Of a DNA stretch of 64,000 nt, positions 422 to 53,444 are shown piece after piece. The stretch's first letter is position 1, and the number at the start of each line of letters is the position of its first letter. Origin of the DNA: Scyliorhinus canicula (taxonomy: Eukaryota); assembly GCF_902713615.1 (NCBI RefSeq), contig NC_052173.1, positions 11,160,350 to 11,224,349 of the forward strand. The letters are read 5' to 3'. The notes under the pieces were generated by a model. That model saw only the letters and a list, made by a program, of their open reading frames with translations. It ran no database searches and was not told the DNA's origin. The position numbers and the translations under genes are program-made.

Positions 422-563
422 GTTCAATGTTGGACATAATCAGGAGGACAATCAGCAACAATGAACACAAGACTGGTGTGTTAGATGAGCCAGTAATAGC
501 AACAGTGTTAAAAGAGGTGTTGGAGGGCTTGGATTATCTCCACAGGAATGGACAGATTCACAG
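422..563 (+). CDS. SPAK/OSR1-like kinase exon ([48 protein letters not shown])
   Basis: tttag| acceptor, |gtaaac donor, 142 bp; leads into catalytic HRD. Confidence 0.95.
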
Positions 564-3500
564 GTAAACTTTCAAATCTTCATCTCGAACTCCTGTTGAA
601 TGTGTGTGTGTGTGTGGTGGGGGGGTGGGGGGGTGGGGGGGGGGGGGGGTGCTATTCGCCGGCATGGTCACTTCTGAGGGAATTAACACAGTCATTTTCT
701 ACCAACAGGAAATGGTGCATTTAGCCCTTTATTGGGGTGCTGCAGATAATCTTCTTATTAAAGTATCTATTTCCTCATTCAGACAATTCTGGGCATTGGT
801 CAGTATTTTATGGTGAAAAAGAAATTTAAAACTTGCATTTATGTAGCGCCTTTCTTGACCTCAGGACATCCCAAGTTTTACAGCCGTTCAAATGTGGACC
901 CTGGTTGTAATGTAGGAAAATGGCAGGCGGCAGTCACGTGTGCAACAAGCTCTCACTATATGATAATGACCATATTGATCTTGGTTGAAAGATTAACATT
1001 TTTTTGCTAAATTTAGAGTACCCAATTAGTTTTTTCCAATGAAGGGGCAATTTCGAGTGGCCAATCCACCTACCCTGCACATTTTTGGGTTGTGGGGGTT
1101 TGACCCAGGCAGACACGGGGAGAATGTGCAAACACCACACGGACAGTGACCCAGAGCCGGGATCGAACCTGGGACCTCGGCACCGTGAGGCAGCAGTGCT
1201 AACCACTGCGCCACCGTGCTGCTGTGAAAGATTAAATATTGACTCGTACATTGGGGAGAACTCCCCAGCTCTTCAAAAAATGATGAGAACTTTTCCGTTC
1301 ACCTGAGATCTTGGTTTAATATTCTATCCAAAGGATACAACAGAACAGAGCTCCCTCAGCACTGCACTGGGAGTAAGAGCCTAGATTATGTGCTGAGGTC
1401 CCTGGAGTAGGATTTGAACCCAGAACTTCTGAGGAGAGGGAAGAGTTTTACCCACTGACTCACAGGTGCTTTCGGGCAGTGGTTTTCATACTTTGTTTAC
1501 AGCGACCCATTTTTACAGAATGGCTCTTGATCCACGCCACATTCACAATACATCCTCTGTAGTTACTTTTAAAAATGTCACACTCATTGTTGGCACTTCT
1601 GTATTAGTAAATGTAAAAGTTGTAAATTGTGCTGCTGTTTCACCTTCAAGGACAGTTCTATCCTGACACCTCGCTAAAGGGTGTAACTCAGGATTATTTG
1701 ATTATTTTATATCTTCACACCCATTGTTAGCATTTGGCGAATTGCGTGCACGCGCTGGAAAGATTAACAGGTTCAATATTGCACGCTTTTAACAACGCCA
1801 TGTTCACTCGCTCAAAATCTAACACGGCCTCGGATAGGAAATTAAACTCAAAACTCAAACTTCAGAAACAGGAGTCCTAACAGCTGAACTCAAACCACGG
1901 TCAGACAGAATGTGACTGGTCGCCTGTCAGTACCGTTTCCCAGGTAATGATGTAACAGACTGAAAACATTCGAAAAAAAATAACAATGCAGGGCAAAGCT
2001 CAGCTGACCAATGTGCAAAACGTGCGGGCACATTCCATTCCATACACCCGCAACATTTCACCGGCTCCTGTATACATGAGCGTAGTTTAGTTGCCACTAA
2101 TGTCATCTTTGGGACACAATTGAAGTCCTGATAAAGCTAGAAGCTAAAGTCCTTGCGGTAGAAGAACCGATTCAACTGATGGAGTCCATGTAGCCACATG
2201 GCAGAGACTGATGCTTGGGGACGAGTACCTGGGAAGAGGGGGTGGAAAACAGAATCGTGGACAAGAGCCCCGGTGTGGAGAGACAATTCGGAAGTGGAAG
2301 GAGTGGACATATAGGGGCTTGTAGGGGAGGAGGAGGCTGTATGTCCGGGTTAACTGAGAGAATGATAAAGGACGCATGGGGTTTATTAGTGACACACTGA
2401 ACTCAAGACATGATCCAGATCCCGACGCTGAACACTAGCAAGAAATGCCACCCAAAGAGAATTTTACAGGTCACTGGCTGCAAACTGCCCCAACTACACT
2501 GGCCCAGAGAGGCAAGCAAGCCCATGACACCGGTTTCTATATCAGCCTCATGTGGTCATACACTGTACTGCAGTAAGAATTTACTCAGAGAGAAGACAGA
2601 AAAAATGGTGAGGCGATCTTTGGGGATAATTTTTGTTGACCTTTTGGCGATCCATTCTACACCATCCTGCGACCCATCAGCGGGTTGAGACCCCCACTTT
2701 GAAAATCACTGCCTTAGGGATCAGCTCTTTGACTGTGCCCATCTTGAGTTGTCTTGGGATACAGCATATTACGTGGCACGGTGGCATATAAGGCAGCATG
2801 GTGGCACAGTGATTAGCACTGTTGTCTCACAGGGCCAGGGACCTGGGTTCAATCTAGCCTTGGGTGACTATGTGAAATCTGCACGTTCTCCCCGTGTCTG
2901 CGTGGGTTTCCTCCGGGTGCTCCGGTTTCCTCCCACAGTCCAAAGATGTGCAGGCCAGGTAGGGTTATAGGGATAGGGGAGGGGAGTGGGCCTAGGTAGG
3001 GTGCTCTTTCAGAGGGTCGGTGCAAACTTGATGGACTGAATGGTCTCCTTCTGCACTGGTTCTATTACAATTTGAGAAAGGTTCTGCTAATTGGTCAGTA
3101 TGGCCTCCCATGCAAGGAAATCCATTATCTACAATTCTACATTAAATATTGGAGGGTTGACCTGAAACAAAGTGGGGAAAAAAAACGAGACACAAGAGGA
3201 GAACTGAACGTTTGACAATAATCCTTCCAAACTTCTCATATTTATATTGTTTGAATGTGTTTTCCAATTACAGGGATGTTAAAGCTGGTAATATTCTACT
3301 TGGTGATGATGGATCTATACAAATTGCAGGTAGGTTTATATAAGCAGTACTAATCTCATCATTGTGCAGTAATTCAAATTAATTCCCTTAATGTGCTTCT
3401 CCTGTGAGTTATATTACATTAGCTGGTCGAGGATTATCAGAATGGATAACAAAATGGATTATGTTTAAATCATGACTTTTCGTAAGAAAGCATCTCCAGT

Positions 3501-51945: not shown

Positions 51946-52393
51946 ACAGTCGTTTGAAATCCAATCTTCCCTGCCCAGATGGTGGCTTATGCTCAAGAAT
52001 GGCAGCAGATAAAAACCCATGCCCTCACATAAGCACTTTGCATTCCAGACCCATTCTTTCAGTTGCTTGGCAGTACTTTGATCTTGACAAAGTTTAGCTT
52101 TTGGGAGGTTGTGTGGTTATGGCCAGTGAAGAGAGGGAGTAGGATTTCAAGTGCACACAAGTGCTATTTTAGACACTCATGTACACAGTTACTAAAGCAT
52201 TTTTAAAAATCTACAAATAGCAATCATCTCTCTTCTTACTCCAAATATATATTTTTTTCTTTTCAAAATAAAGTCCACATTAATAAAGGCACTTAGAATA
52301 AACCACTTTACAACAGAAAGTTCGGAGCTGATACTAACATCTATGAACCACAAGGCCAGTCACCAATTAAAATATGTAAATCACCCACAGTAT

Positions 52394-53444
52394 TTAATCC
52401 TCATCTTCATAACATCTATTTCTCTTGATTTGTTCTTCAACTGACAGTTCCTCAGTTTCCTCCACTTCCTCATTTTCCTCCACTTCCTCATTTTCATCCC
52501 CATCCCAAAAACCAACATCTTCCAGTTTTCTCTCATTCTCTGGAATTTGCTCATTTGAGGTAAGCGTTTCCCCGGAAGTTTGCAACTTAACAGGCTTTTG
52601 TTTGGATTCCTGCTCCTCGTATTCAAGGAAGTCGGGTTCTCTGGACTCCTCTTTGTTGAGGTAAAGCTCTTCTCCATCCTCATCATGAAGCAGCTGTCCA
52701 TTGTTGCATTTGACGTCTACAACCTCTTCAGTCACTGAATCTTCTTCTTTTCCCTTGAGCTCAGTAGTCATTAATTGTTCGTCCTCATTTTTTAGACTTG
52801 GCTGGTTTGTATTCTTCAATTCATCGGTTTCGCTTTTGGCTTCCTTTTCTTTGCCGATCACGTTCTGTGCTGTATTTTTAGGCGGTGGATTTTCCCCCGG
52901 CTCTTTTACGGTTATAGGTGTCAGAGGGGCAGCAATGGTAAATGGTCTACAGCGTTCTTTCAGAGATGCACTTCGTCTCAGTCTCGAGGTACCAATGAAT
53001 TCGGAGTTTCTCTTGGTCATCTGCTGGAAATCCTCTGGAGGCCATTTTGGTTTGTTAACTCTAAGGTTTTCTTCAGCAGAACTGACTCCTTTACTACCAG
53101 CTTCAGTAGGTGGAGGCCAAGCTATTTTTAATTTTCTTGTTTCTACAGATTTCTCCACCTTTTCTGGCGAAGAACTGGTACCCAAGGCCTCCATGCTGGC
53201 AGCCAAAACACCTACCTTGAGTATGGAAAGTTCATCTACTCCAGAGTTCTCAGTTTTGGCCTCGGGTTTATCCATGGCAACTTCACTCTTGTTCTCTGCA
53301 GCGTCACTCTCATTTTTGGCCATCCAAAGCTCCTTGTGTGGCTTGTGGCCAAATCCCTCATCGTAATTACCTTTGGATTTGAAGAGCTGGCTAAAATGTG
53401 GCTTGCAGTACACATTCCCATGTAGTGAGGCAAAATTTCCAATG
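52394..53444 (-). CDS. LIMA1: LIMA1/EPLIN terminal coding exon (second half of LIM domain and acidic C-terminus)
   Basis: gcacag| acceptor; [79 protein letters not shown]. The [11 protein letters not shown] and LRRSxSLKER blocks are LIMA1-type, not XIRP2/LIMD2. Confidence 0.95.

What the first reader, a model, noticed from the sequence alone, without database searches (positions are those of the whole stretch)
422..53444. Probable third SPAK/OSR1 kinase: an ohnolog beside LIMA1 that mammals have lost
Seen in sequence: an intact SPAK/OSR1-family gene is tail-to-tail with LIMA1. The protein mixes SPAK-type residues ([24 protein letters not shown], EYLxEKLL, VDDP, SGC) with OSR1-type ones (DVKAG, ADIW, HKFF, GGWEW, SNRS, LSI). 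Established (recalled): humans have only STK39 (2q24, order XIRP2> B3GALT1> <STK39 CERS6>) and OXSR1 (3p22, near XIRP1). Human LIMA1 (12q13) is related to the LIM-bearing XIRP2 isoform and abuts CERS5 with no kinase between them. Inference: this gene fills the empty STK39 slot in the LIMA1-CERS5 paralogon and is a whole-genome-duplication copy retained in cartilaginous fish. SPAK/OSR1 activate NKCC1 downstream of WNK, and the shark rectal gland is a classic NKCC1 tissue, so an extra kinase could matter for elasmobranch salt handling.
Basis: partly seen in the sequence, partly recalled or inferred. Interest (0 to 1): 0.78.

Follow-up and report, generated by a model that had tools for sequence, protein, structure and literature searches.

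The report
Extra SPAK-type kinase beside shark LIMA1
The catshark has an expressed, unusually divergent relative of the salt-transport-regulating kinase SPAK (STK39) lying tail-to-tail with LIMA1; it is most likely an old extra copy that mammals lack, but I could not retrieve the shark's ordinary SPAK and OSR1 genes to prove this.

Summary
The window holds the 3' two thirds of a SPAK/OSR1-family kinase gene on the + strand. There are 13 exons (422-38153) encoding 368 residues with no stop or frameshift and sound splice sites. Its stop codon lies 14.2 kb from the stop codon of LIMA1 on the - strand, so the two genes are tail-to-tail. The N-terminal part of the kinase lies left of the window, so "intact" is shown for only part of the gene. 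One spliced RNA contig confirms three introns, one of them GC-AG. Many transcriptome-sized runs hold the last exon and its 3'UTR.

A maximum-likelihood tree puts the protein outside both bony-vertebrate clades, as sister to STK39 (support 95/87) on a branch three to four times longer. AU tests do not exclude the other two placements (p 0.09). Its docking (CCT) domain is 71% identical to both paralogues, although that domain is identical in mouse and tinamou STK39.

I favour an STK39-sister ohnolog in the LIMA1 block (about 0.65). Not tested: separate STK39 and OXSR1 genes in this genome, CERS5 to the left, and orthologues in other species. All protein searches returned only teleosts or birds.

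The parts
422..563 (+). Kinase exon (first one inside the window): (G)[46 protein letters not shown](R). This is kinase subdomain V-VIb.
   Evidence: (SPAK 5dbx E 8e-19, OSR1 3dak E 2e-17). AG acceptor, GT donor.
3274..3329 (+). Kinase exon: (R)[18 protein letters not shown]. Catalytic loop HRD..K..N.
4473..4582 (+). Kinase exon: [37 protein letters not shown]. Holds DFG, the T-loop Thr and APE.
   Evidence: (Pkinase).
10766..10867 (+). Kinase exon: [34 protein letters not shown].
14226..14359 (+). Kinase exon: [44 protein letters not shown](R).
15682..15730 (+). Kinase exon: (R)[16 protein letters not shown]. End of the kinase domain.
17500..17565 (+). Exon: [22 protein letters not shown].
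19955..20074 (+). Exon with the S-motif: [40 protein letters not shown]. Donor GTGAGT.
   Evidence: The join to the next exon rests on frame and homology only; no RNA evidence.
27877..27944 (+). Short linker plus the start of the CCT domain: [22 protein letters not shown](R). The donor is GC, so this is a GC-AG intron.
   Evidence: The RNA contig joins 27944 to 28458.
28458..28510 (+). CCT exon: (R)[17 protein letters not shown].
30012..30080 (+). CCT exon: [23 protein letters not shown].
30599..30663 (+). CCT exon: (V)[21 protein letters not shown].
38082..38153 (+). Last coding exon: [23 protein letters not shown], with stop TGA at 38151-38153.
   Evidence: Held by many RNA-sized runs.
38154..39560 (+). 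3'UTR of the kinase gene. It runs at least this far; the true end was not mapped.
   Evidence: 18 runs from 7 studies hold 35-96% of the words of 38060-39560. The same runs hold only 5-12% of the intron-rich stretch 14200-20150.
34868..35068 (+). Candidate alternative exon inside a repeat-like stretch. It follows an AG, and read in frame from the preceding exon it reaches a stop after 66 codons.
   Evidence: The RNA contig continues past 30665 with GACTATAT. GTGACTATAT occurs only at 34868. Only 10 letters of evidence.
52394..53446 (-). LIMA1 last exon: second half of the LIM domain, the EPLIN motif and the C-terminal domain, ending ..[18 protein letters not shown].
   Evidence: (Mobula LIMA1-like 57%, coelacanth 43%, human 43%).
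54313..54447 (-). LIMA1 LIM-domain exon: [44 protein letters not shown]. Edges are approximate.
   Evidence: EPLIN 2d8y, E 6.5e-20.
63480..63575 (-). A LIMA1 exon further upstream: ENEGGTPKLSAQGIKHPRSTMEIQSNPAKSFK. Edges are approximate.
   Evidence: aligns to Mobula LIMA1-like residues 149-180.

Best explanation
This is a transcribed gene of the small-spotted catshark for a third member of the vertebrate SPAK/OSR1 (GCK-VI, STE20) kinase family. It is the sister gene of STK39 and sits in the LIMA1 block, which is the paralogous counterpart of the XIRP2-STK39-CERS6 block. It most likely dates from the early vertebrate genome duplications and is absent from that position in the bony vertebrates sampled.

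Inferred mechanism: like SPAK and OSR1, it would be switched on by WNK kinases through phosphorylation of its T-loop Thr and S-motif Ser. It would dock through its C-terminal CCT domain onto RFxV/I motifs of WNKs and SLC12 cotransporters (NKCC, NCC, KCC), which it then phosphorylates.

The kinase core is well kept. The regulatory tail (S-motif flanks, a short linker, the CCT surface) has changed much more than in any STK39 or OXSR1 sampled. That points to a specialised or partly relaxed role.
For: Shown:
- 13 exons with an open frame of 368 codons. All acceptors are AG; 11 donors are GT and 1 is GC.
- One spliced RNA contig with 0 mismatches joins exons 9 to 12, across the GC-AG intron.
- The last exon plus 3'UTR is held at 35-96% by 18 transcriptome-sized runs from 7 studies and two species labels. 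The same runs hold only 5-12% of an intron-rich stretch.
- HRD, DFG, APE, the T-loop Thr (RKTFVGTP) and the S-motif Ser (GSSGHL) are all present.
- The tail scores 128.8 bits (E 4e-42) against a CCT profile built without it. Only the real tail appeared in the top rows printed; none of the 200 shuffled tails did.
- The pocket residues recalled from the OSR1 CCT structure are kept: IRFEF, GRD, SQEL, AGL.
- In the tree the gene falls in the vertebrate family (99/96). It is sister to carp plus tetrapod STK39 (95/87) and outside that clade (94/67). Its end branch is 0.97, against about 0.3 for bony STK39 lineages.
- It shares two derived states with STK39: D in DYLH and H in GHL.
- CCT identity is 65/92 to STK39 and 65/92 to OXSR1. 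Mouse and tinamou STK39 are 93/93, and STK39 against OXSR1 is 74-75/93.
- The 3' neighbour is LIMA1. Gar OXSR1 has an SLC22-like gene downstream instead.
- XIRP2, B3GALT1, STK39 and CERS6 are named together in one 2.8-Mb interval in pig. CERS5, LIMA1 and COX14 are named together as genes affected by one hypertension-associated CERS5 variant in man, which suggests but does not show a single locus.

Inferred or recalled:
- Gene orientations in man. STK39 is head-to-head with CERS6 and tail-side to XIRP2. The 3' end of LIMA1 faces the 5' end of CERS5.
- CERS5 and CERS6 are each other's closest paralogues.
Against: - No chondrichthyan STK39 or OXSR1 sequence could be retrieved. A sister position to bony STK39 is also what a true shark STK39 orthologue would show.
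- AU tests do not reject the gene joining OXSR1 (p 0.088) or lying outside both clades (p 0.089).
- The long branch makes its placement less safe.
- The N-terminal third of the gene and the left-hand neighbour are outside the window.
- Expression looks low: contig depth is about 4.
- The one spliced contig appears to leave exon 12 for a repeat-derived exon rather than the conserved last exon.
- The window differs at 29 of the 251 columns that are invariant in all sampled STK39 and OXSR1 sequences. This could equally mean relaxed constraint.
Confidence: 0.65

Rival explanations
1. It is simply the catshark's only STK39 orthologue. It evolved unusually fast and now sits next to LIMA1 after a rearrangement.
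For: It is sister to bony-vertebrate STK39. It shares STK39 derived states and has 6 of 11 STK39-type diagnostic residues against 0 OXSR1-type. It has a short SPAK-like linker and 73% overall identity to tinamou STK39, against about 62% to OSR1b. No other shark STK39 was seen, but none could have been: the searches listed only teleosts or birds.
Against: Its 3' neighbour is LIMA1, not XIRP2 or B3GALT1. A chance move into exactly the paralogous slot, in the paralogous orientation, is unlikely. STK39 is extremely constrained elsewhere: the CCT domain is 93/93 identical between mouse and tinamou, and carp is 92% identical to tinamou over 296 aa. This gene is 71% identical in the CCT and 86% in the kinase part.
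Confidence: 0.17
2. It is a cartilaginous-fish-specific (or elasmobranch-specific) duplicate of STK39 that landed beside LIMA1 and then diverged.
For: The same tree position and long branch would be expected. The exon-intron structure is complete, so it would have to be a DNA-level duplicate rather than a retrocopy.
Against: The position and orientation match the expected paralogon slot. A random insertion would not predict that. No trace of a duplicated flank was seen in the window.
Confidence: 0.1
3. It is a decaying or non-coding remnant. It is transcribed at a low level but no longer makes a working kinase.
For: It has a long branch and changes at 29 of 251 otherwise invariant columns. Contig depth is low, and there is an apparent splice into a repeat-derived exon that would cut off the last 23 residues of the CCT domain. 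The N-terminal exons were not seen.
Against: There is no stop or frameshift in 368 codons over 13 exons spread across 38 kb, and every splice site is usable. Catalytic and regulatory key residues are kept. Only 6 of the 29 changes fall in the roughly 200-aa kinase part, and they are conservative. The conserved last exon and its 3'UTR are present in many RNA-sized runs.
Confidence: 0.06

Closest known systems
STK39 / SPAK (PASK), vertebrate GCK-VI STE20 kinase
   Same: It is the nearest clade in the tree (95/87). The same exon pieces and domain order are present: kinase C-lobe, S-motif, short linker, CCT. Shared STK39-type residues include DYLHRN, GHL and SGC. T-loop Thr, S-motif Ser and the CCT pocket residues are kept.
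   Different: Identity to tinamou STK39 is only 73% over 368 aa, and 71% in the CCT, which is invariant between mouse and tinamou. It lies beside LIMA1 rather than XIRP2, B3GALT1 or CERS6. The S-motif flank is [11 protein letters not shown] instead of RRVPGSSGHLH. The N-terminal proline-alanine box could not be seen.
OXSR1 / OSR1
   Same: Same family and architecture. The kinase part is 82-86% identical. It shares old states such as DVKAG, ADIW, HKFF and SNRS.
   Different: It has none of the 11 fixed OXSR1-specific residues. The linker is far shorter. The tree favours STK39, although an OXSR1 grouping is not rejected (p 0.088). In gar the downstream neighbour of OXSR1 is an SLC22-like gene; here it is LIMA1.
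Invertebrate single-copy orthologues (Drosophila Fray, C. elegans GCK-3, the Ciona gene)
   Same: Same pre-duplication family. The CCT profile and kinase motifs are shared.
   Different: The window's gene lies inside the vertebrate clade (99/96).

Membership tests
SPAK/OSR1 (GCK-VI) kinase family | STE20-type catalytic domain with HRD, DFG and APE motifs | tested here: met
   IHRDVKAGN, DFG and WMAPE are in exons 1-3. The best PDB matches are the SPAK and OSR1 kinase domains. Pkinase hits on exon pieces. Only the part from subdomain V onward is in the window.
SPAK/OSR1 (GCK-VI) kinase family | N-lobe: glycine loop, catalytic Lys, alpha-C Glu | not testable with these tools
   These exons lie left of window position 1. 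There is also an N run at 156-311, which I left untouched.
SPAK/OSR1 (GCK-VI) kinase family | WNK target sites: T-loop Thr (OSR1 T185 / SPAK T233) and S-motif Ser (S325 / S373) | tested here: met
   [18 protein letters not shown] and [14 protein letters not shown] are in the translation. Residue numbering is recalled. Phosphorylation itself was not tested.
SPAK/OSR1 (GCK-VI) kinase family | C-terminal CCT (PF2, OSR1_C) docking domain | tested here: met
   A profile built from 20+ family members without the window scores the tail at 128.8 bits, E 4e-42. Only the real tail appeared in the top rows printed; none of the 200 shuffled tails did. IRFEF, GRD, SQEL and AGLVD are kept. Pfam itself could not be run on the spliced protein.
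SPAK/OSR1 (GCK-VI) kinase family | Falls inside the vertebrate SPAK/OSR1 clade | tested here: met
   Support 99/96 for vertebrate STK39 + OXSR1 + window against Ciona and other invertebrates.
STK39 orthologue group | Groups with STK39 in a tree | tested here: inconclusive
   It is sister to carp plus tetrapod STK39 (95/87) but not inside that clade (94/67). The AU test does not reject other placements (p 0.088 and 0.089). No shark STK39 was available.
STK39 orthologue group | Conserved neighbourhood (XIRP2, B3GALT1 on the 3' side; CERS6 on the 5' side) | tested here: not met
   The 3' neighbour is LIMA1. No B3GALT1-like ORF stood out in the ORF list for 38-52 kb, though I ran no targeted search. 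The 5' side is not in the window.
OXSR1 orthologue group | Groups with OXSR1 and shares its fixed residues and neighbourhood | tested here: not met
   0 of 11 OXSR1-specific residues. The tree favours STK39. Gar OXSR1 is followed by an SLC22-like gene, this gene by LIMA1. The AU test alone does not reject the grouping (p 0.088).
LIMA1 / EPLIN (the neighbouring gene) | One EPLIN-class LIM domain, the adjacent EPLIN motif, and a long C-terminal domain ending in EEQIKRNR-Y-acidic | tested here: met
   LIM exon against EPLIN 2d8y, E 6.5e-20. The last exon aligns end to end with LIMA1 of ray, coelacanth and man. The EPLIN class is described in PMC3305314. No full XIRP2 protein was available for a tree.

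The most novel reading that the evidence does not exclude
Cartilaginous fishes keep a third, undescribed branch of the WNK effector kinases: an STK39-sister ohnolog lost in all bony vertebrates. Its remodelled S-motif surroundings, short linker and altered CCT surface would give it its own set of docking partners or its own regulation, for instance in elasmobranch salt-secreting or urea-retaining epithelia. An alternative 3' exon may produce a form without a complete docking domain.
Probability: 0.3. Interest if true: 0.65.

Novelty: new member of a known kind. Interest (0 to 1): 0.5.

Why it matters
SPAK and OSR1 are the only known direct effectors of WNK kinases in vertebrates, and they control NKCC, NCC and KCC salt transporters. 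The shark rectal gland is the tissue in which NKCC1 regulation was first worked out. A third family member in sharks would mean that the two-kinase picture drawn from mammals is a reduced state. It would also offer a natural variant with a changed docking domain and regulatory tail for asking what sets partner choice. It would add one more marker to the STK39-CERS6 / LIMA1-CERS5 paralogon. The full-text searches found no paper describing such a gene.

Tried and rejected
1. Retrieving shark STK39, shark OXSR1 or orthologues of this gene.
- The spliced protein has no reference, so it could not be sent to any search tool. I left that step out.
- The exon-5 search of cluster representatives gave mostly fragments and mis-predicted proteins.
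- The three homologue searches listed only teleost OSR1b, LIMA1 and bird or mammal STK39.
- The cluster look-ups found only carp, frog and birds.

2. Building a query profile from a scaffold protein plus the window's exon pieces.
- MAFFT misaligns the short pieces whatever the scaffold or the number of scaffold copies.
- A local simulation showed that such a profile would not rank the window's own protein first. I abandoned the idea.

3. P0066 and P0067 as possible orthologues. They look like degraded reptile STK39 copies and are only 52-56% identical to the window's protein.

4. Synteny through LIMA1 proteins of a ray and two frogs. These isoforms are not on record.

5. Bird, croaker and vole LIMA1 loci. 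No kinase remnant appears in the 10 kb downstream. The flank is short, though, and CERS5 was not identified there either.

6. Earlier findings of this scan. None mentions STK39, OXSR1, CERS5, CERS6, LIMA1 or XIRP.

7. Rejected, because it comes from comparing with human sequences only.
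Full report
**What is in the window**

The window is 64 kb, with one N run at 156-311 that I left untouched. Notes from earlier work in this scan name the genome as the small-spotted catshark.

On the + strand, stop-to-stop reading frames carry unmistakable SPAK/OSR1 motifs. The first piece (from 422) matches the SPAK and OSR1 kinase-domain crystal chains at E 8e-19 and 2e-17, ahead of MST3/MST4 at 1e-5 to 1e-6.

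I mapped 13 exons by tblastn with a tinamou STK39, a hake OSR1b and a carp protein, and by reading the splice sites. The exons are 422-563, 3274-3329, 4473-4582, 10766-10867, 14226-14359, 15682-15730, 17500-17565, 19955-20074, 27877-27944, 28458-28510, 30012-30080, 30599-30663 and 38082-38153.

Joined together they give an open frame of 368 residues, running from GSMLDII (kinase subdomain V) to GFAQLSIR and the stop. Every acceptor is AG. Eleven donors are GT and one is GC (27945).

The window starts inside the gene. The glycine loop, the catalytic lysine and the N-terminus lie to the left.

**The neighbour**

On the - strand there is a LIM exon (54447-54313) and a large last exon (53446-52394), plus one further exon near 63.5 kb.

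- The 367-aa ORF finds LIM domain and actin-binding protein 1 from a ray (57%), coelacanth (43%) and birds and man (40-43%) over 94-98% of its length.
- It ends in the same [13 protein letters not shown]-acidic tail as those proteins.
- The LIM exon matches the EPLIN LIM structure best (E 6.5e-20).
- Translating by hand the mouse XIRP2 LIM sequence printed in a methods section (PMC10259482), I count the window's LIM exon closer to LIMA1 ([13 protein letters not shown] against PMERLLANQQVFH) than to XIRP2 (PMECLIADKQNFH).

The neighbour is therefore LIMA1, not XIRP2, although I had no full XIRP2 protein for a tree.

**Is the kinase gene expressed?**

- One contig from a public run lies on 27884-27944, 28458-28510, 30012-30080 and 30599-30663 without a mismatch. 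That confirms exons 9-12 and three introns, including the GC-AG one.
- Eighteen small runs of transcriptome size, from seven studies and two species labels, hold 35-96% of the sampled words of the last exon plus 1.4 kb downstream.
- The same runs hold only 5-12% of the intron-rich stretch 14200-20150, where exons make up 6%.
- That contrast is what a mature mRNA gives.

Two cautions apply. Depth is low. The spliced contig also continues past exon 12 with letters that fit not the conserved last exon but a unique site at 34868, which follows an AG inside a repeat-like stretch. An alternative 3' exon is possible but rests on ten letters.

**What kind of kinase is it?**

HRD, DFG, APE, the T-loop threonine and the S-motif serine are all present. 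A CCT profile built from the other family members scores the tail at 128.8 bits; only the real tail appeared in the top rows printed, and none of the 200 shuffled tails did.

A careful maximum-likelihood tree of 29 sequences gave these results:
- The protein falls inside the vertebrate family (99/96).
- It is sister to carp plus tetrapod STK39 (95/87) and outside that clade (94/67).
- Its end branch is 0.97 changes per site, against about 0.3 for the bony STK39 lineages.
- AU tests do not reject a grouping with OXSR1 (p 0.088) or a position outside both clades (p 0.089).

At the 11 columns where all six STK39 differ from all fourteen OXSR1, the window has the STK39 state six times, the OXSR1 state never, and neither five times. 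DVKAG and ADIW occur in carp STK39, and ADIW in lizard STK39. Two states shared with STK39 (D of DYLH, H of GHL) are derived relative to all outgroups.

The window departs from 29 of 251 columns that are invariant in every STK39 and OXSR1 sampled. Twenty-three of those changes fall in the regulatory tail.

The CCT domain is 65/92 identical to STK39 and also 65/92 to OXSR1. Mouse and tinamou STK39 are 93/93 identical, and STK39 against OXSR1 is 74-75/93.

**Orthologue or extra copy?**

The tree alone cannot tell a shark STK39 orthologue from an STK39-sister ohnolog. Both would sit where this gene sits. Two things favour the extra copy.

1. The neighbourhood.
- Gar OXSR1 is followed by an SLC22-like gene, as I recall it is in man.
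- XIRP2, B3GALT1, STK39 and CERS6 are named together in one 2.8-Mb interval in pig.
- CERS5, LIMA1 and COX14 are named together as genes affected by one hypertension-associated CERS5 variant in man, which suggests but does not show a single locus.
- Lima1 and Xirp2 belong to one LIM class (PMC3305314).
- From memory, and not tested here: STK39 lies head-to-head with CERS6 and tail-side to XIRP2. The 3' end of LIMA1 faces the 5' end of CERS5. CERS5 and CERS6 are each other's closest relatives.
- A kinase lying tail-to-tail with LIMA1 and sister to STK39 is exactly what that paralogon predicts.

2. The degree of change. It is out of keeping with the constraint on STK39 everywhere else.

Against this, I could not show that the catshark has a canonical STK39 or OXSR1. 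I could not see what lies left of the window, and I found no orthologue in any other species.

- The spliced protein has no reference, so it could not be sent to the search tools.
- The three homologue searches, made with proxies, listed only teleost OSR1b, LIMA1 and bird or mammal STK39.
- Attempts to build a query profile from exon pieces failed.

**Loss in other lineages**

The 10 kb downstream of LIMA1 in a manakin, a croaker and a vole hold no SPAK/OSR1-like coding remnant. This agrees with absence from bony vertebrates, not only mammals. The evidence is thin, because the flank is short and CERS5 was not identified there.

**Verdict**

The sequence observation is real and the coordinates are good. 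"Intact" is only partly shown, and the "mosaic" argument is wrong.

The best reading, at about 0.65, is an expressed third SPAK/OSR1-family gene. It would be an STK39-sister ohnolog in the LIMA1 block, working as a WNK-activated, RFxV-docking kinase with a remodelled regulatory tail.

The main rival, at about 0.17, is a fast-evolving, relocated sole STK39 orthologue. A lineage-specific duplicate (0.10) and a decaying gene (0.06) remain possible.

I found no paper describing such a gene. The scan's own notes show nothing on this gene elsewhere in the genome.

Noticed in passing
window 27945-28457: A GC-AG intron (donor AAG|GCAAGG) in the kinase gene. A spliced RNA contig shows it is used.
   Followed up: yes
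window 34868-35068: An RNA contig appears to splice kinase exon 12 to a site inside a repeat-like stretch ([24 protein letters not shown]..., stop after 66 codons) rather than to the conserved last exon. If real, this form would lack the last 23 residues of the docking domain. Only 10 letters of evidence.
   Followed up: partly
window 57783-62989 (+), inside a LIMA1 intron: A nearly full-length LINE. It has a 301-aa ORF1-like frame, then an endonuclease frame (Exo_endo_phos, E 2e-19) and a reverse-transcriptase frame (RVT_1, E 6e-25). The last two overlap at 60911-60933, so one frameshift splits ORF2.
   Followed up: partly
window 21972-24530 (+), inside a kinase intron: Fragments of an LTR-retrotransposon pol gene (RVT_1 and RT_RNaseH hits), broken into several frames.
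   Followed up: partly
many places, e.g. 934-1306, 6325-7221, 11360-12237, 18967-19205, 30984-31215, 47814-48491, 53515-54142, 55749-56297: One short repeat family recurs on both strands. Its frames read ..[24 protein letters not shown].. in one direction and ..[37 protein letters not shown].. in the other. It is probably a SINE. Some RNA contigs lie on such repeats in introns (run X2).
   Followed up: no
window 1-421: A purine-rich low-complexity stretch (frames read GERERE...) surrounds the 156-base N run at 156-311, just before the first kinase exon in the window. I left the N run untouched.
   Followed up: no
window 38060-39560: Runs under a second species label (organism B) hold 38-78% of the words of the kinase 3'UTR stretch. 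A close relative therefore transcribes a near-identical 3' end.
   Followed up: no
L001 38290-39622 (manakin, downstream of LIMA1): The gene called 8.7 kb downstream of bird LIMA1, on the same strand, has a 342-aa product with no Pfam family on record. CERS5 would be expected to carry one. I did not identify it.
   Followed up: no
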